This document shows positions 13,030-62,442 of a stretch of DNA of 64,000 nucleotides, piece by piece (the first letter of the stretch is position 1; every line of letters begins with the position of its first letter). Origin of the DNA: Takakia lepidozioides (Eukaryota > Plantae > Bryophyta); the NCBI GenBank assembly GCA_030704615.1, contig CM060733.1:18972001-19036000 (forward strand). Reading direction: 5' to 3'. The notes beneath the pieces were generated by a model. The model saw only the letters and a program-made list of their open reading frames with translations, was not told the DNA's origin and did no database searches. The translations under genes were made by a program, and so were the position numbers.

Positions 13030-14080
13030 TCGGTTGAAATTTTTTGGCAGTGACTTCCATGGGGGCGGGAGATTAGCTCCTCCAAGGAAGCCGTAGATAA
13101 TAGGCGTGATTTTAACCACTGCCAGGCTGCGTCTGAATGCATTATCCAGTGTCCATCCGCGTAGCTTTAGTTCGCAAAAGATCGGAGATATAGGCATCTC
13201 GTTGCCAAATTCATTAGATGTTCATCTTCAAAATTCGAGGAAGGGCAGAAGAATGGGGGGGGGGCTTCCCTGTTCCCGAGGCAGTAGGATGAGACGGGCC
13301 GCGGAGGCGGTGATGAAACTGAAGAAGACCCTGTTCGTTTGCGTTTGGCGTTACGCTCAATCGAGAGAGTAGGCAGAGAGACAGCTACAGTGCTCGCATC
13401 CCGAGAGTGTGAAGGAGAAGCCGGGAGCACCGGCGCACTACAGGTCTCCGCCTGGGCCACCAAAGCCGGGGGCACCTCAGTCTGCCCCTTTGCATCAGAT
13501 TTGACTCTATAGGGGCAATCGGCCTTCACATGACCTTCTCCATTGCATTCAAAACAAATGATACTGAGCAATTCCTCTTTGATTTGTACTGAAATAAAGG
13601 ATCCATCCAGCATTGGCGATTTAATCGTGCTTCCAATCGTAGTTGTCTCTGGCATGAGTGCCACGATTTTAAGAACGCCACTATCCTTTCCAGAGTCGAA
13701 AAGAGAGGGGTCCTGGTCCACACTCAAAATCGCATCGTCGATCGGGTCAAAAACATTCAGGCTCCCTATGTATGAACTAAAGTGAGCTCCAATATTTGGG
13801 AGCGAGGCTAGGTAGTTGTCCGATAGGTAGGGGAGGGCGATGATTCTAGGTTTGCAGGTGGCGCTGTCTTTGTGGCCCATGCAGGAGACCACGGAAAGAT
13901 ATGCACTTTGAGCCACGATTTCCTTGTGATAAACGCTAGTGCACGGTCGATATCCTCTTTGGACCCAAATTTCACAGTGTAGAAGCCGCGAGCCCATTGA
14001 GTGACAGAAATGATGAATCAACCCGCCTTCTACTCCCAGATGCTCAATGATCCATTTCCTTGCCCCGTCCTTGTCCCTAC
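13030..14080 (-). mobile_element. LINE ORF1-like remnant with CCHC zinc knuckle
   Basis: ORF 13167-14021 contains CFECNGEGHVKADC (CX2CX4HX4C) after an IALPYL..LPNIGAHF segment; same strand as the adjacent LINE. Confidence 0.6.
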
Positions 14081-24470: not shown

Positions 24471-27400
24471 ATGTCTGAGAAGGCATGGGGACGTAGCAGC
24501 GGAAAGGACGACAGCGCCTTTTCTGAGACCGAGATCTCTAATTCGGGGCCGTATCACCCATTGCCCACTTCTGGTGAGCAATGTGTGCGGCAGAGGTTTG
24601 TCTGTTTTCTGTGTACTTGTGCGGGAAGTCTTCTATCCTTGGCAGGAACTCCATGCGGATGTCTGATGCTCCTACAATCTGACAGTTTGCTAGTCTGTCT
24701 TAGCTTGAAGCGCGAGTTGGCATTGAAGAACAGTTGTATGCTTTGGAATTGGCAGAGGAAGTGGGTCTGTTCAAAGGGAGAGAGGATGAAGAGGAAAAAG
24801 ACGAATACTTCCCTGAAGATCAATCCCCGGTTGAAGAAGTGGCCCTTACAGTTCCTACTACGGATGATCGCAGCCTGCCCGTCTGGACATTCAGGATGTG
24901 GACACTGGGTATCGCATCCTGCGCCCTTCTCTCATTTCTCAACATGTTCTTCTCGTATCGCACGGAGCCGCTGGTGATCTCAGCTGTCTCGGCGCAGGTG
25001 GCGGTCCTGCCAATAGGACATTTTATGGCAAAGGTGTTGCCCAGTAATTTGGTGCGGGTGCCTTGGACAGGCTTTGAATTTTCAATGAATCCAGGACCTT
25101 TCAACATGAAGGAGCACGTGCTCATCACTATCTTTGCCAATGCGGGCACTAGTTTTGGGTCTGGGAACTCGTATGGGATCTCCGTGGTCAATATAATCAA
25201 GGCCTTCTACAAAAAGGAGATAGCCTTCGCTGCGTCCCTCTTCCTTATCATCACATCCCAGGTGAGAGCGTTTGCGTCTCCTACCAAGTTTCACATCCGT
25301 CTGGGTCTAGTCGCAGGGATGAGAGGTTGGAAACAGAGAGAAAGAAAGATAACAAGAAAGTAGACACCACCACGAAGGCAACATGGAAAATCGCGGCACG
25401 CGCGCGCAGGGCCGCCTGGAGATAAGGTGCAGAGAAACTACGAAAGAAATAAATTTACAGCGACTCAGGGCCCCAGAGCTGCTGCTAAAGCCTTGCTAAG
25501 CGCAGGATCCTGCAGCAAGTGACTGATATTTCAGAAAGCTTACAAAGTTGATTCTAGCATTGATCGAAGCTTGTGGATATTGTGAAATTGGTGGAAATGC
25601 TTTGGAATCTGTAGCTTAGCTACAATTGTTGATAAGCTGAGATGAAAACTTGAATATGCACATCTCCCCATGCTGGCAATATCTTGAAGCAATATAAAAT
25701 TCGAAACAATCAAGTGTGGGCTATGATTACAGGTGCTGGGATATGGGTGGGCAGGACTGCTACGCAAGTATCTGGTGGAACCAGCACACATGTGGTGGCC
25801 TTCCAATCTAGTCCAAGTATCAGTCTTTCGGTAATGCTTTGTGTTCCTGACAATAATTGACTTCAAAGTTTATGACTACTAAGGTTTTGTGTCAAGCTCT
25901 ATTAGTATGAAGCCTTTGTAGCATAGGAGGTAAGAGATCAGCTAAGTTACACCATCAGGAGAGACACAGCTCTAGTCAGACATCCTGAGTGATGGTGATA
26001 AAACAACCGCATATGTTAATCCCTGTTTAGAATGAAAGCTGATTGACATCCGTCAGTCTGAGTGTAAAGTTAATGCATATAGGGAGTAGGAGTTTTAATA
26101 AACAACTCGAAGAGAGGTCAAAAGGTGTTGGATGGGGTTTGACAGGACTCTACATGAAAAGGAGGAGGGCAAGGGCCGTCTATCTCGCAGTCAGTTTTTT
26201 CTCATAGCTATGACTGTGAGCTTCGCGTACTACGTGTTCCCAGGTTACCTCTTCCCGATGGTAACATACCTCTCATGGGTGTGCTGGGTGTGGCCACACT
26301 CTGTCACTGCTCAACAGATTGGATCAGGCCTTCATGGCCTGGGGGTGGGTGCTGTCAGCCTTGACTGGTCTGGCATAGCAGCATACCTGAATAGTCCACT
26401 GGTGACCCCCTGGTTCTCCATTGTAAATATGGCAGTTGGGACTGTGATTTTTCTCTATGTCTTTGTACCAGCGGCTTACTGGATGGATGCCTATGAAGCC
26501 AAGAAATTTCCTATCTACTCTAGCAAGCTCTTCACTGGTGATGGTCAGGAGTACAACACAAGTCGAATCGTTGATCAGAATTTCAAGCTGGATTTAGATG
26601 CATATGAAAGCTACAGCAAACTGCACATCAGTACCCTCTTTGCGCTGTCCTATGGCCTCGGATTTGCCCAAATCACAGCCACGGTCTCCCATGTGGTGCT
26701 GTTTCATGGAAAGTACGTATTTATTTGTAGACCCACTCCCCACTTTTACAGTTGGTCTTTGTATTTCTTCTTGACAACTTTTAGCCTCCCTGCTCCACAG
26801 GGTCGTGGTTTTTGTAATTCGACCCGTGGGAAGGGCTTCACAATTCCATGAATTTCACTCTGGGCAGGCAGCACCACACCTTGAAACACAGATGGGCCTT
26901 CCACAAGGATTGTGAAGAACTCTGTATTCAGCACGCCGCATCTAGGACGCACACCATTTTGTAAGAGAACATCTGTGAACATGCGTATTTCCTCCTCTGA
27001 AGGAAAGTGGGTCTATTCTCCTCTGAAGGAATTCTCTCGACTTATTATGATTAAGGTTATTGGCTGATTATGGCTTGAGTGCAGAGAGATTTGGCGACGG
27101 AGTAGGGCAGCACTGAATGTGGACCACCCTGATGTTCATACTCGTTTGATGAGATTCTATCCAGATGTTCCAGATCACTGGTTCTTGCTGCTACTGGGGG
27201 GTAGTGTACTTCTGACAGTAGCAGTATGTCTGCAGTTCCAGGAGCAGTTCCAACTGCCCTGGTGGGGAGTGCTGCTCGCCTGTGCACTCTCCTCTACCTT
27301 GACCCTGCCTCTGGGTGTTCTGACTGCCACTACCAATATGGTAACTCTCTCCCCTTACCTTTCTTTTGTATGCACTGCCTTTGGAATCCTTGCTTCTCAG

Positions 27401-29366
27401 TCCCGTTGTAAACATACCCTTTGCTTTTGTAGACACTGCTTATGATCTTCAATTAGTTGAAATTGTGACCAATCATTGGTTGAGTTGTGCAAAGGGGACT
27501 TTTTTCTTATGTTAAACAAAGAGGCTGTTGAGTAGTTCCTGTGGAACACTCTAGGTTGCAAGGAGACCATTGACTAGGAGATAGGATTGGTGTGACCATA
27601 CAAATGCTTGGATTGTGTTTCAGCATTTACAAATTTCTCAAACCAGGTGTTCCGGCAGGTCATAATGTTTCCCTGCCACAACTGCATGAACTTATCCCTT
27701 TTCTCTAGACGTTTTTCTTACTAACCTGGTGTATTCATGGACTGTATGCGTCATATTGTTTTTCAAGAGTCTTTTGTAAATGGTGTCAAATTTTTTAACA
27801 AGAAGTGCATGGGCTTGGGTTGGTGGGGACCAGACACCAGGTTTGAATATAATTTCAGAATACATTATGGGTCTCCTATTACCAGGCCAACCTATAGCAA
27901 ATGTGTTGTTCAAGACATATGGTTACAACAGCACTCAGCAAGCCATCGCCTTTCTGTCTGACTTCAAGTTGGGACATTACATGAAGATTCCACCTCGCTC
28001 TATGTTCATTGTACAGGTGAGTGATGATCCATTCACCTCCCCTTGGACTTCGGAATTTTTTCAAGTACCACGGCCTTTACTGCATTCCCTATCCACCATA
28101 GTCGTCATGAGGAGGAGTAGGCCAGATTTGATCTTTTGTGGACTCATATCAGAATAGTCCCCACTCTACGGCAACCCCTGCCAAATTATAGAAATGCCTT
28201 CCTCCACATTGAAATTCAGGCCTTTGCACATTAATATCAGATTTGGATATTTCTTTCCATGCATTGCAATGGAAATATCATATTTACATGGACAAAAAAC
28301 AGTGGTTTTCAACCCAGGATATTTCCAAGTAGACTTTGGGTCAAACACATTCCAAATATTTTGACAGATAAAAGTCTGGATGACATGTCCATACAGTGTA
28401 AACAGTCCTAACATGTATGACAGATCCCCTTTAGACCCTCAGGATACTACCCAAGATCAGATTTCACACCTCTACGAATGTACAGGTGGTTAAATAAACG
28501 GCTGCGTTGATCACGTAGACTATGGTGCAGATCCAGGTACTATTACAGGGTAATGCAACATGCGGGTGACTTGAAACTAGACACTGCATCAGTTGGTGGA
28601 CTCTTAGAATACTGAAGTTGCATGATTTGTCTTGCATAGGGATCAACTGTCTTGTAGTGGTTAACTCTTGGTGTCCGAAAGATCTATTGTTCTGTGTGCT
28701 GTTTGAACTTGCTAATGACTTGTGATCGATGACACCTGCGTTTGCATGCAGCTAGTGGGCACAGTTGTTAATGGCACCTTGAACTTGGTTGTCGCATGGT
28801 GGATGCTGTCGTCCATTCCCAACATTTGTGACCTCAGCATGCTCCCAGCAGACAGTCCTTGGACTTGCCCCTACGATCGAGTGTTTTATGATGCCTCCGT
28901 TATCTGGGGCCTCATTGGTCCAGGAAGAATATTCGGGTCGATGGGACTCTACAGAAACTTGAACTGGTTTTTCTTAGGAGGTGCTCTGTTGCCGATTCCT
29001 GTGTGGGCTCTAAGCAGGGTGTACCCCAAAGTAAGGTGGATTGCTCTCATCAACGTCCCTGTCCTCCTGACTGCCGGTGGAGAAATGCCTCCTGCTGCTG
29101 CCGTCAATATTACATCATGGGTGATCGTTGGGGTGATCTTCAATTACTACGTTTTTCGGCATCACAAATCATGGTGGAAGAGGTACAACTACGTGTTGTC
29201 CGCAGCCATGGATGCAGGCACGGCATTCATGGGAGTGTTGCTCTACTTGTGTCTTGGTCTATCGAACAAGAGTATCGATTGGTGGGGCACCCAGGTGGAC
29301 CATTGCCCTCTTGCCACCTGCCCTACAGCTCCTGGGATCATAGTCAAAGGCTGTCCAGTGTGTTGA
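24471..29366 (+). CDS. OPT: Oligopeptide transporter (OPT family), copy 1; exons 24471-24573, ~24711-25261, 25733-25830, 26146-26712, 27085-27340, 27834-28016, 28752-29366
   Basis: [33 protein letters not shown] (NPG motif), [11 protein letters not shown] (KP motif), [31 protein letters not shown]; GT-AG introns in frame. The first acceptor and the start are less certain. Confidence 0.93.
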
Positions 29367-30359
29367 GTTCACTTATCTGCAAATTATTTGATCAACAATA
29401 CCTTCACTACTACACAATCACATATTGCATTGGATTAGACAGTGGCAGATCCTCCTGTACATATCCCATTTCTTCTGAAACTGGACTGGTAAGCCTCCCT
29501 GTTCTGTGGGGTGGTGTCGTCAATGTACTTAAGAAGATTGATTCGAGTAAAGCACTTGCACTGGCGACCAAAGAGAGTATCGGAAGGAGTCAGTTGAGCA
29601 GTTTAAATTAAGCGGGTCGTGGACTCATGCGCTATGGACCAGAAGGGCTTGGACGAAACACCACAGTCTGGGGTCTACTTTTCCGGTAGCGGTCTGGATG
29701 ATATTTCCATCCAAGCTTCAACCTGAAAAACAATGCGAAGACGAAGTAATTTCCTGAGTACCCTAAGTACGTTAGAGTACGTTATACAGCACGCAAGCAA
29801 GGATGCCTTCGCCACCTCTCAACGTGTAGTATTGAGAATTGAAGACTTTCTGTTCTACGTACAGCCGTGTGCCAGAGTTCTAGAACAATTGAGGACTGCG
29901 AAGATAGGCACCCTCCAGCAATACCCATACTGTACAATTTAAAGTTTAAGCCTGTGCAGGTGAGGTAACGCATAACGCCGACGGGAAATCTAGAACCCTG
30001 TTTAGTAGTGAGAAGGATTGATCGAACAGGGCAAGTGCTGCTCCTCCATCACCCATGTGCTCGAGAATGGAGGGATAGAACGGGGTCCCTAGTGGCTTAC
30101 CCTCCGCACTGTCCCAGACACAGAGGCTGGCGCACAAGCCCTCCTGTGGACTGCCCACCTCTCCGAGCCACGCCTTGCCATGGATTCTATGGCGTATGCT
30201 GCTCACGAGTACGTGGCTCAATCTACAGAAGACGTACCGTACTTACCTAGCTTACTAGGCTCTTCCGCGCCTAATAAATCCAGCAAAGGAGCTAGTCCAA
30301 CAACCACCTTCCAAAAAGGGTTCGTTTTTATTATTTAGGCACCTCACCTAAGTAATTTC

Positions 30360-37047: not shown

Positions 37048-37778
37048 TTAAGTTCTTACCTCATTCCTAGTGTCTTCCCAATTGATAATAATATATGACG
37101 CCTCCCAAAGGAAGCGTAAATTATGGTGTCTCTTGACCCTGAAGGGCAGAAGGCAGGTGGACCACGTGAAGTTGAACCCACAATCAAGACCTTTGCAGCA
37201 AAGCAAAGAGTTTGTAATGTTCTCATCACCAACTTCAACTTCAGCCCAAATTCCTTGCTTTGGTTTTATTTGTACAGTGTAGAGTGTAGAGTGTAGAGTA
37301 GAGGGTTGGGTGAATCTGGTCCAGCAGCCGGCCACAGCAGCCCAGCTCATTGGCCAGTTTGTCTTCTAGTTGCTCACAGTCCCTGGGTTGCGTGAGCGTA
37401 CATTCTGTCTGGTCCAGGACTGTGGGAAGGAAGCCTGAGACGTGGGCTTGTGGTCCCAGCAAAACAAAGAAAGCGGGAAAGGGGGTGAAGCGTGCTGCGA
37501 ACGAGTAATCTACTCTACCCGGCTTCTGCGTGGGAGGACTTCATGATTCCCAGTTTGAGAGTAGTGTGAGAGAAAGAAGAAAGAATTGGTTACGTTTGGA
37601 GAGGAAGAAGGAGTTTTTTATGATTCCCGGTTTCAGACTGTTGTGAGAGAAACAAGAAAGAATTGATTACGTTCGGAGAGGAAGAAGGAGTTTCCCGGTT
37701 TCTGACTGTTGTGAGAGAAACAAGAAAGAATTGATTACGTTTGGAGAGGAAGAGGGAGTTTTTTCAGGTGGGCGAACA

Positions 37779-40700
37779 ATGTCTGAGAAGGCATGGGGAA
37801 GTAGCAGCAACAGCGCCTTTTCTGAAACCGAGATCTCTAATTCTGGGCCGTATCACCCATTGCCCACTTCTGGTGAGCAATGTGTGCGACAGAGGTTTGT
37901 CTGTTTTCTGTGTACTTGTGCGGGAAGTCTTCTATCCTTGGCAGGAATTCCATGCGGATGTCTGATGCTGCTGCCGTGTATCCTACAATCTGACAGTGTT
38001 GCTAGTCTGTCTTAGCTTGAAGGGCGAGGCTTTGAAGAACAGTTGTATGCTTTGGAATTGGCAGAGGAAGTGGGTCCGTTCAAAGCGAGAGAGGATGAAG
38101 AGGAAAAAGACGAAGACTCCCCTGAAGATCAATCCCCGGTTGAAGAAGTGGCCCTTACAGTTCCTACTACGGATGATCGCAGCCTGCCCCTCTGGACATT
38201 CAGGATGTGGACACTGGGTATCGCATCCTGCGCCCTTCTCTCATTTCTCAACATGTTCTTCTCGTATCGCACGGAGCCGCTGGTGATCTCAGCTGTCTCG
38301 GCGCAGGTGGCGGTCCTGCCAATAGGACATATTCTGGCAAAGGTGTTGCCCAGTAATTTGGTGCGGGTGCCTTGGACGGGCTTTGAATTTTCAATGAATC
38401 CAGGACCTTTCAACATGAAGGAGCACGTACTCATCACTATCTTTGCCAATGCGGGCACTAGTTTTGGGTCTGGGAACTCGTATGGGATCTACGTGGTCAA
38501 TATAATCAAGGCCTTCTACAAAAAGGAGATAGCCTTCGCTGCGTGCCTCTTCCTTATCATCACATCGCAGGTGAGAGCACTTTTGCGTCTCTTACCAAGT
38601 TTCATATCTGTCTGGGTCTAGTGCCAGGGATGAGAGGTTGGAAACAGAGAGATAGAAAGATAACAAGAAAGTAGACACCACCACGAAGGCAACGTAGTGA
38701 ATCGCGGCACGCGCGCGCAGGGCCGCCTGGAGATAAGATGACGAGAAACTACGGTAGAAATAAATTTATAGTGACTCAGGGCCCCAGAGCTGCTGCTAAA
38801 GCCTTGCTAAGCGCCGAACCCTGCAGCAACTAACTGATATTTCAGAAAGCTTACAAAGTTGATTCTAGCATTGATCAAAGCTTGTGGATATTGTGAAATT
38901 GGTGGGAAATGCTTTAGAATCCGTAGTTGAGCTACAATTGTTGATAAGCTGAGATGAAAACTTGAATATGCACATCTCCCCATGCTGGCAATATCTTGAA
39001 GCAATATAAAATTCGAAACAATCAAGTGTGGGCTATGATTACAGGTGCTGGGATATGGGTGGGCAGGACTGCTACGCAAGTATCTGGTGGAACCAGCACA
39101 CATGTGGTGGCCTTCCAATCTAGTCCAAGTATCAGTCTTTCGGTAATGCTTTGTGTTCCTGACAATAGTTGACTTCAAAGTTTATGACTACTCAGGTTTG
39201 TGTCAAACTCTAGTAGTATCAAGCCTTTGTGTAACAGTCCCTAACAGATCAACTGAGTTACACCATCAGGAGAGAGACAGCTCTAGTCAAACATCGCGAG
39301 TGATGGTGATAAAACAACCATAGGTTGTAGAGTTTTGCATATGTTAATCCCTGTTTAGAGTGAAAGCTGAATGACATCCCTCAGTCTCAGTGTAATATAA
39401 GGAGTAGGAGTTTTAACAAATAAATAATTCGAAGAGAGGTCAAAAGTTGTGCTGGAATGGGGTTTGACAGGACTCTACATGAAAAGGAGGAGAGCAGGGG
39501 CCGTCTATCTCGCAGTCAGTTTTTTCTCATAGCTATGACTGTGAGCTTTGCGTACTATGTGTTGCCAGGTTACCTCTTCCCAATGGTAACATACCTCTCA
39601 TGGGTGTGCTGGGTGTGGCCACACTCTGTCACTGCTCAACAGATTGGATCAGGCCTACATGGCCTGGGGGTGGGTGCTGTCAGCCTTGACTGGTCTGGTG
39701 TAGCAGCATACTTGAGAAGTCCACTGGTGACCCCCTGGTTCTCCATTGTAAATTTGGCAGTTGGGACTGTGATTTTTCTCTATGTCTTTGTACCAGCGGC
39801 TTACTGGATGGATGCCTACGATGCCAAGAAATTTCCTATCTACTCTAGCAAGCTCTTCACTGGTGATGGTCAGGAGTACAACATCACTCGAATCGTTGAC
39901 CAGAATTTCAAGCTGGATGTAGATGCATATGAAAGCTACAGCAAACTGCACATCAGTACCCTCTTTGCGCTCTCCTATGGCTTCGGATTTGCCCGAATCG
40001 CAGCCACGGTCTCCCATGTGGTGCTGTTTCATGGAAAGTGCGTGTTTATTTCTACCCCCACAGCCCACCTTTACAGTTGGTCTTTGTCTTTCTTTTTTAC
40101 ACCTTTTAGCTTCCCTACTCCTCAGGGTGATGGTTTGTGTCCTTTGGGAAGGGCTTCACAGTTCCATGATATTCATTCTGGGCAGGCAGCACCACATCTA
40201 GAAACGAAAGAGAACGTCCTTGAACATGCTTGTCTGCTACACTGAAGGAAAGTGGATCTTTTCTCCTGTGAAGGAATTCTCTTGACTTCGTTATGATTAT
40301 GGTTATTGCCTGATTATGGCTTGAGTGCAGAGAGATTTGGCATCGGAGTAGGGCAGCACTAAATGTGGACCACCCTGATGTTCATACTCGTTTGATGAGA
40401 TTCTATCCAGATGTTCCAGATCATTGGTTCTTGCTGCTACTGGGGGGTAGTGTGCTTCTGACTACAGCAGCATGTCTGCGGTTCCAGGAGCAGTTCCAAC
40501 TGCCCTGGTGGGGAGTGCTGCTCGCCTGTGCACTCTCCTCTACCTTGACCCTGCCTCTGGGTGTACTGACTGCCACTACCAATCTGGTAACTCTCTCCCC
40601 TTACCTTTCTTTTGTATGCACTGCTCTTGGAATTCCTGCTTCTCAGTCCTGTTGTAAGCATACCCTTTGCTTCTGTAAACACTGCTTATGAGTCGCAATT

Positions 40701-42297
40701 TATGCAGCCTCTTCAATTAGTTGAATTTGTGACCAATCATTGGTTGAATTGCTGCAACGTCAGGTCAAAAATAGGCCGTTGACTATAACTTATGCTTGTA
40801 GAAGGCCAAAGGGAAGGGCAACACTCCCCAAAGTGGAGTCTATTGATTAAGTTCCCATGGACTGGTAGAGGTTGCAGGGAGACCATTAACTAGGAGTTTG
40901 GATTGGGGTGATTATATTTAAGTGCTTGGACTGTGTTTCAGCATTTACAATGTTCTCAAAACAGGTGTGCCGCAATAAGGTTTCCCTTCCACAACTGCTC
41001 AACTTATCCTTTTTCTCTAGACTTTCTTAGTAATAGACTGGCTTCTTTGTAGTCATGGACTGTGTATGCTTCATGATGTTTTTTCAATACTCTATTGTAA
41101 GTGCTGTTGCATTTTCATAAGAAATGCATTGGCTTGGGTTGGTGGGGATCAGACACCAGGGTTGAATATAATTTCAGAATACATTATGGGTCTCCTATTA
41201 CCAGGCCAACCTATAGCAAATGTGTTGTTCAAGACATATGGCTTCAACAGCACTCAACAAGCCATCGCCTTTCTGTCTGACTTCAAGTTGGGACATTACA
41301 TGAAGATTCCACCTCGCTCGATGTTCATTGTGCAGGTGCAAGATCATCCATTCTCCTCCCCTTGGAAGTAATCATAATTTGATCTTTGATGGACTCATAT
41401 CAGAACAGTCTGGGCCACTTCACGGCACCCCCTCCCAAATAGGAGACATGCCTTCTTGCACATTGAAAATCCAAACTGCATGCCTTTGCACATTAATGTC
41501 AAGTTTTGATATTAGTTGGCGGACTCTTGGTATACTGAAGTTGCATGATTTGTCTTGCGTAAGGGAGGGATCAACTGCCTTTTAGTGGGCAACTTCTGGT
41601 GTCCGCAAGATCTTCTATTGTCTTGTGTGGTGTTGGAACTTTCCAATGACTTCTGATCAAGGACACCTGCGTTTGCATGCAGCTAGTGGGCGCAGTTGTT
41701 AATGGCACCTTGAACTTGGTTGTCGCATGGTGGATGCTGTCGTCCATTCCCAACATTTGTGACCTCAACATGCTCCCAGCAGACAGTCCTTGGACTTGCC
41801 CCAGTGATCGAGTGTTTTTTGATGCCTCGGTTATCTGGGGCCTCATTGGTCCAGGAAGAATATTTGGGTCGATGGGACTCTACAGAAACTTGAACTGGTT
41901 TTTCTTAGGAGGTGCTCTGTTGCCGATTCCTGTGTGGGCTCTAAGCAGGGTTTACCCCGAAGCAAGGTGGATTGCTCTCATCAACGTCCCTGTCCTCCTG
42001 ACTGGCGGTGGAGAAATGCCTCCTGCTGCTGCCGTCAATATTACATCATGGGTGATCGTTGGGGCGATCTTCAACTACTACATTTTTCGGCATCACAAAG
42101 CATGGTGGAAGAGGTACAACTACGTGTTGTCCGCAGCCATGGATGCAGGCACTGCATTCATGGCAGTGTTGCTCTACTTGTGTCTTGGTCTATCAAACAA
42201 GAGTATCGATTGGTGGGGCACCCAGGTGGACCATTGCCCTCTTGCCACCTGCCCTACAGCTCCTGGGATCATAGTCAAAGGCTGTCCAGTGTGTTGA
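37779..42297 (+). CDS. OPT: Oligopeptide transporter (OPT family), copy 2, same 7-exon structure
   Basis: Close paralog of 24471-29366 including introns and flanks; NPG and KP motifs intact; no stops seen in exons. Confidence 0.93.
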
Positions 42298-42553
42298 GTT
42301 CATTAATCTGCAAATTATTTGATCAACAATACCTTCACTGCTACACACTCACTTACTGCATTGGATTAGACACTGTCAGATCCTCCTGTACATAGCCCAT
42401 TCTTTGAGAACTATAAGGCCTCCCTATTCTGTCTGGTGGTGCACAGAGGCATGGCTCACTGTAGTGTAGGTGGTTAGGATATTTTAAGCTAAATTGTCGG
42501 TAAGGGAACTATTTGGATGAAATCCACACCATAAGGGAAAATGATGCGGTTAA

Positions 42554-43751
42554 CCCTTAAGTGTCAAACTGACCCGATTTGGGTTGGTTAGGTTTCTTTA
42601 ACCAGCCATAACTTCCTGTGGTTAAGGCTGATTGGCCTTTTTTTTTGGCTCAATTGACGGATAATCGGGTCCCCCTTCATATGGCATTGGTCAATTGGTC
42701 TATGCTTGCAGGGGTAGGGATCTCGATCAATTGGAAGGGGGCAACTCAGCTTTTGAGGCCTTTTTGGCACCCCTAACCTGCCCAAGTTGCCGACATGGCA
42801 ACTGCGGTCAGGTTAGGGTGAATGAATGATAGCCCATACAGGGATGGGCGGCACGCTTCCCCCAAACCATTGATTGCCCGTTGGATATGGCGCAGGTCTG
42901 GGTATTCCCAGGCCTGCATCCTAACCTGAGATGGCTGCTCCAGCCAACACGATTGGCTCATAGCAGGGCGGACTGGAGGGAGTGCAACCGCGATGGCGGC
43001 AGAGCTCGCAGCTCGAGAAAATCTCGGGTGGGCCAAACCCAGGCAGGGGGGTTGATAGGGTTGGGGTGGAGTGGCCCCCCATGAAAGCAGGGCTGGGTAG
43101 CCAGAGGAGCTCCCAAACCGCGTGCCCTTCTGGGCTACCTAGGCCTGCAGGCTACACCAAAGGTGTGCCATTTGAAGTCTTGGGCAGGGAACCTAAGGAT
43201 GCGGTGCATTGGCTGATTGGCCTCAAAGTTTTTCGGGGACCTCATATGGAAGCCCATGACATTTCAACCGCAGGGATTAGGGGTTGACCCGCTGAATTTT
43301 TTTGTATAATTTTAGGAAGAGAGATTTTGGCCTGCCCAAAGAAAATGGCATATTTTGACCCCCCAATTTGTCACTACAAAGGAGCCCACTTGAGAACATT
43401 TCAGAAAAAACTGAAATTTTATGAGAATGTGTGTTATCAGGTATGGAACAACATTCTTGAGACTCTCAAACAGAAAAAATAAAAAGTACCCAAATACGAG
43501 AAAAAACTGCTTTTTTTGGCACCTAGTTCTTAGTGGAGATTTTTTTTTGTCCCCACTCTACACTTTATAATCTTCTGATCTGGCAGTTGGATTTTGGTGA
43601 AACTTTTTGTGGTAGGAGGTGGGGTAGGTGGGGAAGTAATTCCAACGGTCAGTTTTACAGGGACACAGAGATTCTCTAGATAATTTTTTTTTTGGGGGCC
43701 AGGGTCATGTTTTTCCACGAGAGGGTGAAAATGAGTTTTGACACTTAAGGG
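42554..43751. mobile_element. piggyBac-type non-autonomous element 2 (1198 bp)
   Basis: ttaa|CCCTTAAGTGTCAAA ... TTTGACACTTAAGGG|ttaa; absent from the paralogous 3' flank of OPT copy 1, whose homology resumes just after 43755. Confidence 0.78.
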
Positions 43752-44009
43752 TTAAAGTACTTCAAAAGATTGATGCAAGTACAGCACTTGCACTGGCGAC
43801 TAAGAGAGTATCTGAAGTAGTACCCTTTCATATGTATCTGACGGCAGTGCACATAGTTCCATCTTAATCCATAATTCAAGCATACAAGATCACTGCAGTC
43901 AAGCAGGTATATCACAGTTTTCGACTTCAGAATACGATACTTGATAATCTTGCGACCAGGTCTGTTTGGTGCCTCGATCGCCACCACCACAGCTTGTATG
44001 GCGGAATAA

Positions 44010-45206
44010 TTAGACATGATGATGTACAGATGCAGACTTGGCCTTCAACTTCTGTAATGAAAACTGGTGACGAGTATCACCGATAAAATTGCGTAAAGCT
44101 CCAAGGGCAACTTCGTAACCTCGGATGACATTGTTGAAAGTGTGGTGAAGTACCCTTGCGACCCAGACCTTGAAGAGAATTTCTTCCCAGTCAACATCAC
44201 CTTTCTCAAAATGATCAAGAAACTTGAGGAAAGCATTAATCCACGCATCCTCATCAGCAAAACTCCAGCATGGCCATTCGGACGCGTTCAACAAACCCTT
44301 AACAAGGGCAGAGTCAAAGTGCTGCAGGAGTAGTTCCTGCTGCCGTGCTGTCCAGTTGGTTTTCAGCAGCGTCAGCGTCTTCTCTATATCATAACCGATC
44401 TTCTGCTTGATGAGATCCGGGACGGGCTTGTAGGCAGACTCTATGTAGCGGCAACCATCTGCACTGGTAATGGTCTCATTTCGCAGGGACTGGAGGGCGC
44501 TGAAACACTCGACGAGCATAGATCTAAGATCGAGAAGTCCGCCATACAATGCATGCACCTTACCTTCGGGTATGTAGACCTCAGCAAGGCGTAAGCCGGC
44601 CTGAGCACAAACAAAAGTGTACAGGGTATCTATACCCCAATCACTTTGCAAGCGAACGCGTTGATCTCCATACAATACTTCAGCTGCTCTCCTCGTTAGG
44701 AGTAGTTCTCCGCCAAGGGGTTGCTCAATGGAAGGAAGAACTGTGTGCGGCCACATGATAGCGAAGCCTACCTTGGTGACCAGCCATGTAATCATGGCAT
44801 CAGTGCTAGACCTGGGGAAGTAGTGACGGACGACATCATACTCCAAGTCCGCCAGGTTTTCCGCCTTACTAATCCACTCTCCCGAGAACGACACAATGTC
44901 GGAGTCGTAAAAGTGCAGGCGATGATACTCTGGGAATTCCAAGAAAAAAGCAAGCCCGGTATTCATACCATCTCCTTTTCCCTCTCGCAACGATACTCCT
45001 ATGCGATCCTGAAGGACCAAGAGAAGTTTTTTCCCCGTTTTCCTCTCGATACTGGCCTTTGACTCTTCGATGGCGTGCCAAGTTTCACCTTGACTATAAC
45101 CAACACAAAGCACCGCTGCAACACGAGGATGCGACGCAGCGCACTCTACATTCCGTAACACAATGGTAACATCTTCTTCTTTGAAAGGAAAGCACACTAA
45201 AGACAT
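44010..45206 (-). CDS. mgs: Mannosylglycerate synthase (GT78), uninterrupted 398-aa ORF from MSLVCFPFK; alternative in-frame ATG at 45287
   Basis: End-to-end resemblance to Rhodothermus marinus MGS as I recall it: MSLVxFPFK, HPRV, GKGDGMN, HFYDSDI (DxD), VRHYFPRxSTDAMITW, IEQPLGGELL, SDWGIDTLYTF, YIPEGKxHxLYGGL, GYDIEKTL, DWEEILFK. Confidence 0.93.
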   Translation of the reverse strand: MSLVCFPFKEEDVTIVLRNVECAASHPRVAAVLCVGYSQGETWHAIEESKASIERKTGKKLLLVLQDRIGVSLREGKGDGMNTGLAFFLEFPEYHRLHFYDSDIVSFSGEWISKAENLADLEYDVVRHYFPRSSTDAMITWLVTKVGFAIMWPHTVLPSIEQPLGGELLLTRRAAEVLYGDQRVRLQSDWGIDTLYTFVCAQAGLRLAEVYIPEGKVHALYGGLLDLRSMLVECFSALQSLRNETITSADGCRYIESAYKPVPDLIKQKIGYDIEKTLTLLKTNWTARQQELLLQHFDSALVKGLLNASEWPCWSFADEDAWINAFLKFLDHFEKGDVDWEEILFKVWVARVLHHTFNNVIRGYEVALGALRNFIGDTRHQFSLQKLKAKSASVHHHV

Positions 45207-46649
45207 ACTCCGCTTCTCCCCTTTACGCAAGGCTCTTTCTATCTCTACACCTGTCCATGATGGCTTCACGAAGTCAGTGAAAATCATAGTCAGCCTCACC
45301 AATAAAATCGGTGACAACAAAAGTGGCCTCACCAACAAGCTGGAAATTAAAAGTTATCCAACTGGGGACATATCCTGAACAAGTTCAAACAAGTTCAGAT
45401 ACTGTCTGAAAGTTAAGTTCTCAAGCTGTACATTCGCTCACAAGAGTCGTCCGCCAGGAAACTTGCACACATAAGCTAGCTCTCCACTAGGAATTGTAGC
45501 TACATTCAACCACAAGAGCTCAAACCAAGACTGTCTCCAATCTCGGATGCTCCTTCATACTTCATCAAGATAAAGAAGAAAAGCCCTGGCGACTTTCTGT
45601 TCCTGGTCTCTCATTCCTCCTCATCACAAGGGCAGGGGAAGTACGTATGGGAGAAGAAATCCAACATCTAAACGGACTGGTCTGGGTTGCCTCGTTTCAC
45701 TCTAAGAGCACCATATCTAAAATCAACAAGTCCAGATACCTCGTACGGCTCGTACGTACCACTCGCTGGTATATTAACAATGTCAAGCAACAGAATAGTA
45801 TGGAGCTGATTCTGCATCGGCAAATTGTACTTCAAATGGTTTGTAAAGTTTGCAGGAGAGTATATGAACGATCCAAACCTCCCGTGTCACGAGTTTTGTA
45901 TGCTTGCCAAAAATCTACACAAAAAGAAATAAGTCTAATATCAGCCCCCACTTTCCCTAAACAGCACGTCCGGCTAGGCCTCCTCAATGTGCCAGACAAA
46001 GGTATATCTATCTATCTGGTATTGTGCCGCACATTTCACCACATTGCAGAAGTCGAAGTTTTATATTTGCTCGCAGAATACAGAGCACACAGCAGGGCGG
46101 CATGGACTTCCAGCAGTATTGGCAACCGATTTCTGCATGCTTAACCAAGAATTCCTCTGTCACTACTAGTAGGAAATTTGGTCCACCCTTTAGCAAGTTC
46201 CATGTTATCGGATGTTCTCTTCCTGATCTTCAGTATATAATATCCATCATACATCAGCAAGTTTTCAGCTTCCTGAAAACTCGAGACTGCAGAAGTCCCC
46301 TCTCTAATATTAGCTTTTCGAAGACCCACACTGTGAGATCATGCTTCGTACTCACTAAATTTGTCGTTCGCGAGTCGCTGGATCTTCACAATGAACCCTA
46401 CTTTGCCCACATACTTTGCCCACATTCCATTGCGCCCATCACCTAAATTTTCCCTTCCAAGTTCGAACAGAACATTCCATTCCATTCCCAATTTGAACAT
46501 GACCGTTTATAACTCGCAGGAGATGCTCCGACCGTTTATAACTCATGACGTGTGCATGACCAATGCGACCCCACATGACACTTTGGAAATATCGAGAACA
46601 GTTAATTTTTTTTTTACTTTCGTTCCCCTTCGTGTATGCTTTATGGCCC

Positions 46650-47157
46650 CAAGGGGGGTGGTCGCAGAATTTTCTATTTTAAAATAGCTGCGACCAGCGG
46701 CACGGGTGGTCGGACCATTTTTCTTTTTGTTAAATAGGAATAGGTGCGAATAATATGTAGAGCAGTTTCATTCGAGCCTTGATTCTAGAGTGGTCCAGGA
46801 ATTATAGTGGGGCGGTAGGAAGGCCCCGTGTATTAAGGAATGAGATGAGGGGGTCCAAAAAAAGAATGGAGGAATTGGCTAAATTTAGAATAGGGAGTCC
46901 TGCAGGTTGACATGTGTTCAGGGCCTTCTAGAAGGCTCCCAGGGTCGGCGGGCTTCTAGAAGGGTCCCACCGCCCTGAGAGGCTATATAAGGGAAGCCCC
47001 CCTTATTACGTACTAACTTACTACCTATTAAATCAGTAAATAGGTGCGACTACCAGCAGGAGGGTGGTCGCAACATTTTTCTTTTATTTTAACAGTTGCG
47101 TCGACCGCTACTGGTGGTCGCACAATTGTTTTTTTTTAAATAGGTGCGACCACCATG
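46650..47157. repeat. Hairpin-unit array 1 (partial; interrupted by a ~280-bp insert at 46756-47035)
   Basis: TGCGACCACC-N7-9-GGTGGTCGCA-type units with T-rich linkers; 47045-47155 aligns with 61990-62100. Confidence 0.75.
46756..47035 (+). mobile_element. Possible solo or truncated LTR
   Basis: Begins TGTAG, contains CTATATAAGG, ends CA, and interrupts the hairpin array; no matching TSD. Confidence 0.3.
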
Positions 47158-47474
47158 AGGTTGGTCCCCTTGCACCTGTATGTATGTTTGGAGAGGCAGA
47201 TGAAAAGCACATGTATCGACTCCCCATGGATTTGTGAAGGGAAAGATGAATGTTGGGAGCTGCACCTGGCCTTTGTGGCTTTCGAAACCATAATAGGAAA
47301 CAACAATGTAAAGGTAATGACGAAACACAAACACACGCACAACCACCAAACCCTTTCTTGGGTACACATATTCCACCATTTTTTATTTCCGTACACGTAT
47401 GTATGTACCCAAACTGAAACATGGATATCCATGGAAACATACTACATATCATGTGACAGAAGTTATAGTTGTAC

Positions 47475-50452
47475 CTAGTTCCGTCTGGCACGACGACGAT
47501 GGTATGATCTCACGCCTAGTACAAAATCTTTGTCCCCACTCACTTCACCCCCGTTCCCATGATCAGTGCTAGAATCATGATCTCCATCTGTTTTTTCGTT
47601 TCCAGAGGCAACTGGCCGTTGGACCTGTAGTCGTCCTCGGAGTACGTTCAGTTGTCTCTCTGGTCGATTTCCACTCCTATCATGAATACCATCTAAGGTA
47701 TCAGGTCTGTTCACAGGTCGGTCACCAACAAAAGGTTGCACAATTCTCTGCCGTTTTTGGGCTTGTCCCGGATTTCGTGGTGGCCTTGGAGCAAGTCTCA
47801 TATGAGGAAGGCTACTCGCATGTATATCAGAGGGGCCGACATGAGAGGAAGGGGCATGAGATGGACCAGCGAGGGTCGAGGGAGCACGGTTCACATGCGG
47901 ACGTCGTCGGGCCAGATGAAACGACAATGATCAGTCATCGTCATCCGATGGTTCGACTTGCAGAAGTCCCGCAGCAGAAGAAGCATCTCCCAGGATCGGA
48001 GTAGCGATGGAAGGAATTACATGAGGGGGAGAGATACTAGATGGACCAGCATGGGATGGACCGGCTTGAGAAAGAGAAACATGAGATGGAGCGGCGTGAG
48101 ATGAAGCACGGTTCACAAGGGCACGATGTCGGTAAATGAATGACAACGGCCGGTTGTCATCATCCGACGATTCGACCTGCACATCTCCTACAGTCCGTAG
48201 AACTCGTGGTGGGAGAGAGTTGACCTCAACTTCATTGTTGAGAGTGTGTTCCACTGGGGAAGGGGGTCCGCAATTGGGATGACACCATGTCGCAGTTCAT
48301 CAACAACAAGGTCATCGAAAGATGGATGCATTGCAGCATCATCGTCATTAAATTTATCTGGGTCATGTGGAGGATTGCCCACATCATCGGACCCATCCCA
48401 ACCGTTGGAGTCGGAGTCCATCGCGGCGTCGGTGTCATCATTGCTGCTAGATTGGATCTCTGAGGCAGATTCTTCAGACAACAGATTCTTCTCATACCAT
48501 GCAGATGCGTCACTTGCTGTCATCTTTTGCAGTAGCCTACAATTCGTGTAGACATAAATCAATTTGTCAGCCTTGGTAGGATTCAACCTGTTGCGAATCT
48601 TGTTGTGAATAAACGAGTAACTGCTCCAGTTCCGCTCACAAGACGAGGCAGAGCACACTTGAGCAAGAATGTGCTTTATAATGGGAGTTAACGTTCTTGC
48701 TCCAGCTCCAATCAGATCCCATCATTCATGTGGCAATATGTTCATTGCTTTTGGATCCGAAATGTCCTGGAAAGGATTCTGACGATCCGAGAAGCACTGG
48801 TACTCGGACAAAGCTCGCTCTGCCATGTTCAAGGGCGCGAGTTGCATGATGACCCGTACAAGCCCAACTTTGACATCCACATCGTCTCTCAAATCCGTAT
48901 TGTCCAGCAAGAATGGATTCAGCAAGGCCCCCGCATAATGCAAGTCCGTGCGAACCATCCGTTTGTGGTCGTAAAATGCATCATCGGTCCTTGCCGCCAA
49001 ATCATCATCCATAGAAAATGGAGGACGTCTCAAGGATTGCACGTGCTTATCAAGGTTTTCCAATATCAACCATGCTGTACCCATTATTGGTTGTTTTCCA
49101 TCAAACTCCCGCAAAGCAATCAACACTGGCTCCACCATGTACACAAAATTTGCACATTTCGCCCAGAAATCGTCGGAGCGAATGATTGCGCGGACCCTCC
49201 GACTTTTGCTCAAAGACTTGGACTTACGAGAGTCGTGTAAGGTGCCCATATAGGCATCCCATTGAGGGTCAATGTTCACCTGCTCCAGACCCGCCCTCAC
49301 AGTCACCAGTCGATTCACCATCAAAAAGTTTGTGGCAAAGCGGGTTCCTAAGGCTGTATTTGGGTTCATGCTTTCTAAACAATGTCAGAGGGATGTGATG
49401 TGTACGAATGAACGTCACAACCGACTTTGTCTTTTTTACTAGTTGTTTCATCCATGATTCTTTTCCCCAATCCTCCAAAAGGAGATCAAAGATATTAGCA
49501 GCACACCCTTGGTAATATAGATGGTGATATTGTACCATCAAAATATCGGCCATATTAACCATGTTAGATGCATTGTCCGTGCATACTTGGACAATTTTAT
49601 CAGCTCCAATTTTATCGATGAAACTCATCAACAACCCTGCTTGATAACGTGCATATTTTCTCTCCCTGCTTGTGTCAATGGATCCCACAAATTGTTCCCC
49701 CGCAGGACAGACTAGCATGACATTGAACAGTGGTCGATTAGTAACAGAACTCCAACCGTCCACACATATAGTGCTTCCATATTTCCGGAGCGAATCACCT
49801 GTCTTTTTATTCACCTTTTGGGTGAGATCAAACATAGCCTTTTCTAGCAATCCTGTACGGAGATCGCGATAACTCGGAGGTGTGTATGTGGACTTGGAAT
49901 CGGACGTGGCTTTGACAGCAGCCACAAACGCAGGAAGCCTCGAGACATTGAACGGAATATTGGCCTCGTAGAAAAATTGGGCCCACTTCTTATCCAGAGT
50001 CCTCCTGTGCGACAAATTTAAGCCTTCTTGCATTGATTGTTGCCTCAATGGTCTGGTCCGTACAAGTGCTGGCGTACAATCGGGTGTTGCTCCTGACCCA
50101 CCGGCTTCTCCACGAACAGCAGACACCTTGCAAGAATCCCCCTGGGTACAACTCTGAGGGACATTTTGATTCAAACCTGGAGTGTTTGGCTAAGAAGCCG
50201 CGGCCACATCAAGAGACGGTGAGATATTGCCTCCACATTGGGCAAAGTGGGCTTTCACTCGCATAGAGGCTTTTGGGCACAAACTAATCCCTGTATTATT
50301 CCCATCTCTATAGCCGAGGTGATATAACATGCGATCCGACCCACCAGCTTCAATGCACATAGATTGCATTGAACACCGTCCTTTTTGTGCGGGTCTACGG
50401 TGAACCAAGGGATCCACTCCTCCCTCATCCTCACACCCAAAACCCTAACCAC
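47475..50452 (-). pseudogene. hAT transposase pseudogene (BED-like finger, DUF659, hAT dimerisation domain, low-complexity tail)
   Basis: CNLC..RMLYHL..C; FFYEANIPFNV; TICVDGWS; VQVCTDNASN; TRFATNF; LHYAGALLNP; E*W..LAQVCSASSCERNWS..HNKIRNRL; frameshifts near 50340 and 49350 and in-frame stops. Confidence 0.88.
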
Positions 50453-56302: not shown

Positions 56303-57042
56303 ACGATCGCCAGCAGGGGGTGGTCGCATTTATTTATTTATTTTTCTTTATTATGTGCGACCACCAGCAGGGGGGTGGTCGCAAAACTTTTATTTATTTT
56401 TAAATGTGCGACCACCAGCAGGGGGGTGGTCGCAGAATTTTTATTTTTTTAATAGGTGTGACCACCAGCAGGGGGGTGGTCGCAGATTTTTTTTTTTTTT
56501 AATGGGTGCGACCACCAGCAGGGGGGTGGTCGCAGATTTTTTTTTTTTTTTTAATGGGTGCGACCACTAGCAGGGAGGTGGTCGCATATTTTTTCTTTTT
56601 TTTAATAGGCGCGACCACCAGCAGGGGGGTGGTCGCAACTTTTTTGTTAAAAACAAATAGGTGCGACCACCACCTGCTGGTGGTCGCATATTTTCCTTTT
56701 CTTTAATAGATGCGACCACCAGCAGGGGGTGGTCATAGGGGGTGGTTGCATAATTTTCCGATTTTTTAATATCTACCAACAGTCAGTAGCTCAGTTGGTT
56801 AAGTGCACTGAGTGCGACCCGGACGATTCTGGGGTCAAATCTTGCTACTTGATGGGTGTGGTATGATTTGTGTGTGGTGTCCCATGCCTACGCCTCTTGG
56901 CGCATGAATGAAAGAGGTTATTTTCTCCTCTCACTACTAAGGGGCCTGATTTGCGAGCTGTCGCTCTCAGGTGTTTCCCAAAAAAAATTTAGAAAAAAAA
57001 TAAAAATAAAATCTGCGACCACCAGTAGGGGGGTGGTCGCAC
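56303..57042. repeat. Hairpin-unit array 2 (~10 units, ~51-bp period), interrupted by a SINE
   Basis: TGCGACCACCAGCAGGGGGGTGGTCGCA at ~56357, 56407, 56458, 56507, 56560, 56611, 56662, 56711, 57014. Confidence 0.92.
56776..56990 (+). mobile_element. tRNA-derived SINE, family A, copy 2
   Basis: TAGCTCAGTTGGTTAAGTGCAC head; body TGAAAGAGGTTA..GGCCTGATTTGCGAGCTGTCGCTCTCAGG matches the reverse complement of 22372-22430; A-rich tail. Confidence 0.72.
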
Positions 57043-61884: not shown

Positions 61885-62221
61885 GTGCGACCTCCAAATG
61901 GTGGTGGTCGCAGAATTTATCTTATTTTTTAATAATTGCGACCACCAGCAGAGGGGTTGTGGCAGCATTTTTTGTTTTTTAAAAATAGATGCGACCACCA
62001 GCAGGGGTGGTCGCATTTTTTTCTTTTCTTAAACAGTTGCGACCACCGTTACTGGTGGTCGCACAATTTTTATTTTATTTGTAATAGGTGCGACCACCAT
62101 AGGGGGGTGGTCCCAACATTTTTCTATTTTTTAATATCTGCGACCACCAGCATGGGGGTGGTCACAGTATTTTTTTGTTTTTTTAATAAGTGCGACCACC
62201 AGCAGGGGGTGGGTGCAGCAA

Positions 62222-62255
<34 letters not shown>

Positions 62256-62442
62256 TTAATAATATCTGCAACCACCAACATGGGGGTGGTCGCAACATTT
62301 TTCTGTTTTTTTAATAGGTGCGACCACCAGCAGGGGGGTGGTCGCAGCAATTTTTTGTTTTTTAATATCTGCGACCACCAGCATGAGGATGGTCGCAACA
62401 GTTTTTTTTATAAAAATAGCATGCGACTTCCTCGTGCGACCT
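61885..62442. repeat. Hairpin-unit array 3 (~10 units, ~51-bp period; one linker expanded by an (ATT)n tract)
   Basis: TGCGACCACCAGCA..GGTGGTCGCA units at ~61885, 61937, 61990, 62038, 62088, 62139, 62191, 62267, 62319, 62370. Confidence 0.92.

What the first reader, a model, noticed from the sequence alone, without database searches (positions are those of the whole stretch)
44010..45206. Bacterial-type mannosylglycerate synthase in a plant nuclear genome
Seen: an intact 398-codon ORF with no coding intron, lying among multi-intron plant genes and plant TEs, so simple contamination is unlikely. Known: GT78 MGS makes the compatible solute alpha-mannosylglycerate from GDP-mannose and D-glycerate; it was characterised in Rhodothermus marinus, has a patchy distribution that includes red algae and the lycophyte Selaginella, and is not a standard seed-plant gene. 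Inference: a horizontally acquired stress-protectant or glycerate-sink pathway that could draw on photorespiratory glycerate. No mannosylglycerate hydrolase partner is recognisable in this window.
Basis: partly seen in the sequence, partly recalled or inferred. Interest (0 to 1): 0.8.

Follow-up and report, generated by a model that had tools for sequence, protein, structure and literature searches.

The report
Ordinary moss mannosylglycerate synthase gene
The open reading frame is a genuine, intact mannosylglycerate synthase gene, but it is the normal intron-free copy that mosses, liverworts, clubmosses and their algal relatives all inherit, not a fresh bacterial acquisition.

Summary
Window 44010-45206 (minus strand) is an intact 398-codon ORF with both Pfam MGS domains (E 1.8e-136 and 1.6e-50). 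It matches the solved Rhodothermus marinus enzyme at E 7e-132 and keeps every metal, GDP-mannose and glycerate contact except a conservative Tyr87-to-Phe.

The recent-transfer reading does not hold. The nearest proteins are 79-82% identical, and the only named one is the annotated Physcomitrium patens MGS. Liverworts, lycophytes and streptophyte algae follow at 66-73%, red algae at about 53%, bacteria at 52-55%.

A careful ML tree separates bacteria from eukaryotes (100/100). It recovers streptophytes (100/99) and puts the window inside the clade that holds P. patens (100/99). The coding sequence is also intron-free in P. patens and Marchantia.

dN/dS against the nearest relatives is about 0.10. 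GC3 and DNA read depth match the neighbouring plant OPT transporter gene.

One local peculiarity: a lineage-specific stop removes the roughly 36-residue streptophyte C-terminal tail, which is still faintly readable in frame downstream. Two small runs guessed to be RNA show no transcript.

GT78 in P. patens, Selaginella and Coleochaete has been published since 2005-2013. This is already known and of low interest.

The parts
44013..45206 (-). Coding sequence of GT78 mannosylglycerate synthase, 398 residues, no intron
   Evidence: Ligand-contact residues checked.
44010..44012 (-). TAA stop codon, premature compared with streptophyte orthologues of 411-438 residues
   Evidence: Alignment. tblastn alignments run through it. 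A DNA-run contig agrees with zero differences.
43899..44009 (-). In-frame remnant of the streptophyte C-terminal tail: 36 codons plus the old TGA stop at 43901-43899. It ends ..EVENCDIPA, against ..EVENLCTVQQ in P. patens, with Cys fifth from the end in both.
   Evidence: DNA identity to relatives' tails is only 50-54%, against 68-73% in the core, so the resemblance is weak.
45207..46680 (-). Single-copy upstream region, presumed 5' leader and promoter. The last ~20 bases before the ATG are conserved among the P. patens-clade loci.
   Evidence: leader alignment. (one 2954-base contig at single-copy depth covers 43728-46680). No transcript evidence.
43751..43821 (+). Piece of the 3' flank of the second OPT gene, paralogous to 29519-29590 behind the first OPT copy. 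It lies on the same read-derived contig as MGS.
   Evidence: paralogy; contig 43728-46680.
42442..43750 (.). High-copy repeat inserted between the OPT2 3' flank and the MGS 3' end. It contains an element with 19-base perfect inverted ends at 42550-42568 and 43737-43755, each beginning with TTAA.
   Evidence: summed contig depth in the thousands; break in the OPT1/OPT2 paralogy; inverted repeat I1.
46642..47300 (.). High-copy repeat bounding the single-copy MGS island on its upstream side
   Evidence: depth table.

Best explanation
This is the native, vertically inherited orthologue of the streptophyte GT78 mannosylglycerate synthase, in a bryophyte genome that is most likely a moss. The product is a cytosolic retaining GT-A glycosyltransferase with no N-terminal extension. 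It should bind GDP-mannose through Glu11, Gln66 and a divalent metal held by the second Asp of the DSD motif (Asp103 here) and His218. It should bind D-glycerate through Ile139/Thr140 and make alpha-mannosylglycerate in one step. By analogy with the Selaginella enzyme it may also make glucosylglycerate. What is shown: sequence identity, domain architecture, conserved contacts, tree position and purifying selection. What is inferred: catalysis, the product, and any stress-protectant role in the plant. In this lineage a nonsense codon has cut off the streptophyte-specific C-terminal tail, leaving an enzyme about the length of the bacterial one (397 residues in 2bo4).
For: Family: Pfam MGS_GT and MGS_C over their full profiles, and 2bo4 at E 7e-132. 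Residues: K9, E11, Q66, K76, D100, D102, R131, D135, I138, T139, L163, W189, D192, H217, Y220 and M229 of the R. marinus enzyme are all kept; only Y87 becomes F. Most of these roles are described in PMC2581804; the roles of K9, R131 and D135 are from my own recall. Relatives: the best hits are the P. patens MGS and unnamed clade-mates at 79-82%, then lycophytes, liverworts and streptophyte algae at 66-73%, red algae ~53% and bacteria 52-55%. Tree: the careful ML tree gives bacteria|eukaryotes 100/100, streptophytes 100/99, land plants 88/81, the P. patens clade including the window 100/99, and the window with P0001/P0003 100/95; the quick 81-row tree agrees. Gene structure: the CDS is intron-free in P. 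patens (1290 bases for 429 aa) and Marchantia (1299 bases for 432 aa). Selection: dN/dS is 0.096-0.103 against the nearest relatives, with dS ~1.07. Composition: GC3 is 0.51, against 0.50-0.59 in the neighbouring OPT exons. Depth: the DNA contig over MGS has depth 55.9, against 56.8 for the OPT 3' end, and that contig also carries the OPT-flank piece 43751-43821. Literature: an MGS EST in P. patens (PMC1079823); GT78 in Selaginella, P. patens and Coleochaete (PMC3342304); Selaginella enzymes for synthesis and hydrolysis (Nobre 2013, cited in PMC5381378).
Against: Expression: two small runs of the same species label, guessed to be RNA, carry contigs on the OPT 3' end but none on MGS. Truncation: the ORF ends early relative to orthologues. 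Host identity: it rests on the MGS tree itself, on plant OPT neighbours that match nothing at more than 65%, and on unchecked notes of other agents; no independent marker gene was placed. Labels: only one row of the clade I call mosses is named (P. patens); the others are unnamed Logan or JGI sequences. Synteny: none with P. patens or Marchantia within 10 kb. Metabolite: I found no report of mannosylglycerate detected in a bryophyte, though my literature search was limited.
Confidence: 0.85

Rival explanations
1. Old horizontal origin. The gene is vertical within streptophytes, but the eukaryotic GT78 clade as a whole arose by one ancient transfer between bacteria and an early archaeplastid, in either direction, followed by many losses. 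This concerns the deep origin only and is compatible with the best explanation.
For: Eukaryotic sequences form one side of a single 100/100 branch against all sampled bacteria. The named eukaryotic hits are only red algae and streptophytes; none is a chlorophyte, hornwort, fern or seed plant. The coding sequence has no intron in the three land plants examined.
Against: The tree is unrooted, and the bacteria sampled are only the best hits to a plant query. Red algae are not monophyletic in it. Ancestral presence with repeated loss explains the same pattern.
Confidence: 0.35
2. Decaying gene. The premature stop and the lack of transcript contigs mean the gene has recently stopped being used and is turning into a pseudogene.
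For: The stop removes a tail conserved from Klebsormidium to lycophytes. No contig of the two runs guessed to be RNA lies on it, although the neighbouring OPT gene is covered. The gene sits between high-copy transposon sequences.
Against: 398 codons remain open, with full-length matches to both Pfam domains. All ligand contacts are kept. dN/dS is ~0.10. The window's end branch (0.17) is close to the path to its sister pair (about 0.13). The tail remnant has diverged to near-random identity while the core has not, which implies selection on the core continued after the tail was lost. The bacterial enzyme lacks this tail, and two other sub-lineages of the same clade also lack its end. The runs guessed to be RNA are small (33-49 million letters of contigs).
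Confidence: 0.1
3. Recent bacterium-to-plant transfer into this species or its close kin.
For: The coding sequence has no intron and is flanked by transposons. The family was first characterised in a bacterium.
Against: Identity to bacteria is only 52-55%, against 79-82% to the P. patens clade. Tree position. Intron-free orthologues exist in P. patens and Marchantia. GC3 matches the host genes. The 5' leader is conserved with other P. patens-clade loci.
Confidence: 0.01
4. Contaminant or misassembly. The 3-kb single-copy island belongs to another organism and was joined to plant DNA through repeats.
For: Both sides of the island are high-copy repeats, and no read-derived contig crosses them. 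The DNA runs may be the assembly's own data.
Against: Depth equals that of the neighbouring plant gene (55.9 against 56.8). The contig that carries MGS also carries 43751-43821, which is paralogous to the flank of the first OPT copy. The sequence is of P. patens-clade type, as expected for the presumed host.
Confidence: 0.03

Closest known systems
Physcomitrium patens mannosylglycerate synthase (P0004, NCBI annotation; EST PPP_6629_C1 in PMC1079823)
   Same: 79% identical over 99% of the length. It has the same two Pfam domains, the same start context and an intron-free coding sequence.
   Different: P. patens keeps the 429-residue form with the full C-terminal tail (GHSAAEGL..KKPKF..CTVQQ). 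The window's gene stops 36 codons earlier. No shared neighbours within 10 kb.
Selaginella moellendorffii MGS (P0018; enzyme studied by Nobre et al. 2013, Planta 237:891, cited in PMC5381378 and PMC3342304)
   Same: 68% identical with the same architecture, and in the same streptophyte clade.
   Different: It comes from a lycophyte and has the longer tail. Its paired MG/GG hydrolase is known, whereas no hydrolase gene was seen in this window.
Rhodothermus marinus MGS, CAZy family GT78 (PDB 2bo4, 2bo6-8, 2y4j-m)
   Same: Alignable from end to end at E 7e-132. The DxD motif, the His metal ligand, and the guanine, mannose and glycerate contacts are conserved. Its length (397) is close to that of the truncated window protein (398).
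   Different: The identity is clearly lower than to plant orthologues; bacterial hits are 52-55% identical. Bacteria lie across a 100/100 branch from all eukaryotic sequences. Tyr87 is Phe here.
Red algal MGS (Porphyridium, Gracilariopsis, Caloglossa)
   Same: They lie on the same eukaryotic side of the tree at ~53% identity. [quoted passage not shown]
   Different: They form separate clades with a different C-terminal extension and an insertion after the GKGDGMNT loop in Porphyridium.

Membership tests
GT78 mannosylglycerate synthase | Two-domain architecture: GT-A catalytic domain (Pfam MGS_GT) followed by the helical MGS_C domain | tested here: met
   Both profiles are matched end to end: 1-239 of 239 and 1-110 of 110.
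GT78 mannosylglycerate synthase | DxD motif with the second Asp, plus a His (Asp102/His217 in R. marinus), holding the divalent metal; first Asp in the network with Lys76 and Asp192 | tested here: met
   D101-S-D103, H218, K77 and D193 are present and sit in invariant columns of the 13-sequence alignment. Roles are from PMC2581804.
GT78 mannosylglycerate synthase | GDP-sugar recognition (Glu11 ribose, Gln66 guanine) and mannose pocket (Leu163, Trp189, Met229) | tested here: met
   E11, Q66, L164, W190 and M230 are kept; Tyr87 is replaced by Phe.
GT78 mannosylglycerate synthase | Acceptor site for unphosphorylated D-glycerate (Ile138 main chain, Thr139 side chain) | tested here: met
   I139 and T140 are kept in the conserved STDAMITW stretch.
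GT78 mannosylglycerate synthase | Groups with characterised or annotated GT78 members in a phylogeny | tested here: met
   It lies within the clade that holds P. patens, inside streptophytes.
GT78 mannosylglycerate synthase | Catalyses GDP-mannose + D-glycerate to alpha-mannosylglycerate + GDP | not testable with these tools
   This needs a recombinant enzyme assay.
Recent horizontally transferred gene | Closest relatives belong to the donor group, not to the host's kin | tested here: not met
   The closest relatives are the P. patens MGS and its clade-mates at 79-82%; bacteria reach 52-55%.
Recent horizontally transferred gene | Composition or structure foreign to the host genome | tested here: not met
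   GC3 is 0.51, against 0.50-0.59 in neighbouring host exons. The lack of introns is shared by P. patens and Marchantia orthologues.

The most novel reading that the evidence does not exclude
The C-terminal tail found only in streptophyte MGS (a GHSAxE box, a KKxK[FW] basic patch, and a Cys three to five residues from the end) may be a regulatory or membrane-docking module. It has been shed several times within the P. patens clade, here by a nonsense codon. On that reading, this species carries a naturally tail-less form that is deregulated or relocated, in a pathway that really does make mannosylglycerate or glucosylglycerate as a bryophyte stress solute. I found no in planta demonstration of that.
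Probability: 0.12. Interest if true: 0.35.

Novelty: already known. Interest (0 to 1): 0.1.

Why it matters
It matters little beyond correct annotation. GT78 mannosylglycerate synthase genes in P. patens, Selaginella and charophyte algae have been in the literature since 2005-2013, and the P. patens orthologue is annotated as such in NCBI. The case does show that an intron-free, bacterial-looking gene in a non-seed plant should first be compared with other bryophytes and streptophyte algae before a transfer is claimed. Two biological questions remain open: whether bryophytes actually make mannosylglycerate, and what the streptophyte-specific tail does. This locus adds one natural tail-less allele to that second question.

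Tried and rejected
- Synteny: tblastx of the whole window against 21-kb P. patens and Marchantia MGS loci and three shorter contigs found only the MGS gene itself and no shared neighbours.
- Host identification through the neighbouring OPT gene: one exon, searched by reference, gave only fragmentary plant OPT models at 43-65% identity. Those that carry a name are land plants. This shows a plant gene with no close seed-plant match but does not name the lineage, because the length filter shuts out full-length OPT proteins.
- Expression: no listed holder of the stretch is on record as RNA. Two small runs of the same species label, guessed to be RNA, have no contig on MGS.
- Apparent 1355-base deletion joint (42401 to 43757) in the DNA run: it looked like a transposon-free allele, but it is most likely explained by the paralogous OPT1 flank at 29.5 kb.
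- In-frame upstream extension to TTG at 45338 (442 codons): rejected, because relatives have stops there.
- A small intron removing the TAA: considered by eye from the sequence and rejected, because any GT..AG pair there spans about 30-55 bases, too short for a plant intron (own knowledge).
- Earlier-findings index: it holds nothing on mannosylglycerate or GH63 in this genome.
- Yue et al. 2012 list of P. patens transfers (PMC3493653): a term search of its main text found no mannosylglycerate synthase.
- Not run: structure prediction and the large representative search. 2bo4 and the word search already settle the family.

Full report
**Observation**

The minus-strand frame from ATG at 45206 to TAA at 44012-44010 is open for 398 codons. 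It matches Pfam MGS_GT (E 1.8e-136) and MGS_C (E 1.6e-50) over the whole length of both profiles. It also matches the solved Rhodothermus marinus mannosylglycerate synthase 2bo4 at E 6.9e-132 over residues 1-386.

The ATG is the true start. Loci from the clade that holds Physcomitrium patens share about 20 bases of leader just before it and have in-frame stops further upstream. There is therefore no N-terminal targeting extension.

**Surroundings**

- Two tandem, multi-exon OPT oligopeptide-transporter genes lie on the plus strand at about 24.2-29.6 kb and 37.4-42.4 kb, about 92% identical in their exons.
- A hAT-type DUF659 ORF (49269-50174) and a gag zinc-knuckle ORF (13167-14021) are also present.
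- OPT2 and MGS are convergent.
- The OPT duplication unit continues at 43751-43821, which matches 29519-29590 behind OPT1. It is interrupted at about 42442-43750 by high-copy repeat sequence.
- None of the 21 ORFs of 150 aa or more other than MGS itself matches a GH63 or hydrolase family. Small exons were not scanned.

**Is it in the plant genome?**

A DNA run of the same organism yields one 2954-base contig covering 43728-46680 with zero differences, at depth 55.9. The contig on the OPT2 3' end has depth 56.8. Both flanks of the island (42467-43802 and 46642 onward) are repeats with summed depths in the thousands.

The MGS contig also includes the OPT-flank piece 43751-43821, so MGS is physically joined to native plant sequence on that side. 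The run may be the assembly's own data, so this is consistency, not independent proof.

**Relatives**

The word search gave these identities to the window protein:

| Group | Sequences | Identity |
|---|---|---|
| Unnamed Logan contigs | P0001-P0003 | 80-81% |
| Moss | annotated P. patens MGS | 79% |
| Metagenome cluster | JGI | 75% |
| Lycophyte | Diphasiastrum | 72% |
| Streptophyte algae | Mesotaenium, Spirogloea, Klebsormidium | 66-72% |
| Liverworts | Marchantia, Riccia | 70-71% |
| Lycophyte, streptophyte alga | Selaginella, Closterium | 68% |
| Red algae | several | about 53% |
| Bacteria | Acetothermia/Bipolaricaulota, Rhodothermaceae and others | 52-55% |

The alignment gives 82% for P0001. 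No named hit is a hornwort, fern, seed plant or chlorophyte.

**Tree**

A careful ML tree of 43 rows (LG+C20+F+G4, ultrafast bootstrap / SH-aLRT) gives:

- bacteria against eukaryotes, 100/100
- streptophytes, 100/99
- inside them Klebsormidiophyceae, Zygnematophyceae (94/92) and land plants (88/81)
- the clade of P. patens, six unnamed rows and the window, 100/99
- the window with P0001/P0003, 100/95

An 81-row quick tree agrees. Only P. patens is named in the clade I call mosses. The tree is unrooted.

**Gene structure in relatives**

The coding sequence is uninterrupted in P. patens (1290 bases for 429 residues) and in Marchantia (1299 bases for 432). The lack of introns is therefore a trait of the family in land plants, not a sign of recent arrival. 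The P. patens protein is recorded in 310 blocks of the collection, 270 of them with contigs under 2 kb. These short contigs may be transcript assemblies. A P. patens EST was listed in 2005 (PMC1079823).

**Selection and active site**

Nei-Gojobori dN/dS against the two nearest relatives is 0.096 and 0.103, with dN about 0.10 and dS about 1.07, which is close to saturation. The window's end branch (0.17) is close to the path to its sister pair, about 0.13.

All residues named in PMC2581804 are present and fall in invariant columns. These are:

- Glu11 for the ribose
- Gln66 for guanine
- the Lys76/Asp100/Asp192 network
- Asp102 and His217 for the metal
- Leu163, Trp189 and Met229 for mannose
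- Ile138 and Thr139 for glycerate

The only change is Tyr87 to Phe, which P. patens shares. Lys9, Arg131, Asp135 and Tyr220 are also kept.

**The one local peculiarity**

Streptophyte orthologues run to 411-438 residues and share a tail after the MGS_C domain: a GHSAxE box, a KKxK[FW] patch and a Cys near the end. In the window the frame stops at TAA just before this tail.

Read separately from the ORF, the next 36 codons are open to a TGA at 43901-43899 and end in ..EVENCDIPA, compared with ..EVENLCTVQQ in P. patens. The Cys is fifth from the end in both. tblastn alignments of several orthologues run through the stop.

ORF plus stop plus remnant comes to 435 codons, the normal length. DNA identity of this stretch to relatives' tails is only 50-54%, against 68-73% for the core. 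The tail has therefore drifted while the core stayed constrained, which argues that the truncated enzyme remained in use.

Two other sub-lineages of the clade (P0001/P0003 and P0006/P0009) also lack the end of the tail, and bacterial enzymes have none. The function of the tail is unknown to me.

**Expression**

No listed holder of the stretch is on record as RNA. Two small runs of the same species label, guessed to be RNA, have contigs on the OPT2 3' end but none between 43803 and 46641. This is a weak negative.

**Host**

The MGS tree places the sequence in the clade that holds P. patens. The OPT exon is plant-type but no more than 65% identical to any fragmentary model, and those that carry a name are land plants. 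This argues against a seed-plant host but does not name the lineage. Notes by other agents on the same genome call it moss-like; these are unchecked.

**Literature**

- GT78 members very similar to the bacterial enzyme were reported in Selaginella, P. patens and Coleochaete in 2012 (PMC3342304; also PMC3390603).
[quoted passage not shown] 2013. That paper was not available to me and is cited through PMC5381378.

**Verdict**

This is a correct gene call with an over-read interpretation. It is the ordinary streptophyte MGS orthologue of a bryophyte, already known as a kind. Its one minor lineage-specific feature is the loss of the C-terminal tail. Whether the eukaryotic clade as a whole began with an ancient transfer remains open.

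Noticed in passing
window 24224-29590 and 37389-42441 (+ strand): Tandem duplication of a multi-exon OPT oligopeptide-transporter gene, about 92% identical in its exons and about 13 kb apart start to start. The duplication unit ends within ~80 bases of the old MGS stop.
   Followed up: partly
window 42550-43755: A roughly 1.2-kb high-copy element with perfect 19-base inverted ends that read TTAA+CCCTTAAGTGTCAAA. This is the TTAA target and CCC..GGG end pattern typical of piggyBac-type transposons (own knowledge). It carries no long ORF and looks non-autonomous. Summed read depth is in the thousands.
   Followed up: partly
C-terminal tails of P0002, P0004, P0005, P0008, P0012-P0015, P0017, P0018 (alignment A1): Streptophyte MGS proteins share a tail absent from bacteria: a GHSAxE box, a KKxK[FW] basic patch, and a Cys 3-5 residues from the C-terminus. 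It is conserved from Klebsormidium to lycophytes and lost in several lineages of the clade that holds P. patens. I know of no described function.
   Followed up: partly
window 46652-46696, 56420-56514, 61894-62377: A ~45-base unit at the upstream edge of the MGS island recurs at 82-87% identity in clusters near 56.4 kb and 61.9-62.4 kb. It probably belongs to the high-copy repeat family.
   Followed up: no
window 49269-50174 (-) and 13167-14021 (-): There is a hAT-type transposase fragment (DUF659, E 2e-34) and a gag-like ORF with a CCHC zinc knuckle. These confirm the transposon-rich setting.
   Followed up: no
L008 (JGI metagenome 3300056954), 1627-2991: An environmental metagenome contig carries an MGS that groups with P. 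patens, in a cluster of 57 members. Plant DNA of this kind is therefore common in some metagenomes annotated as microbial.
   Followed up: no
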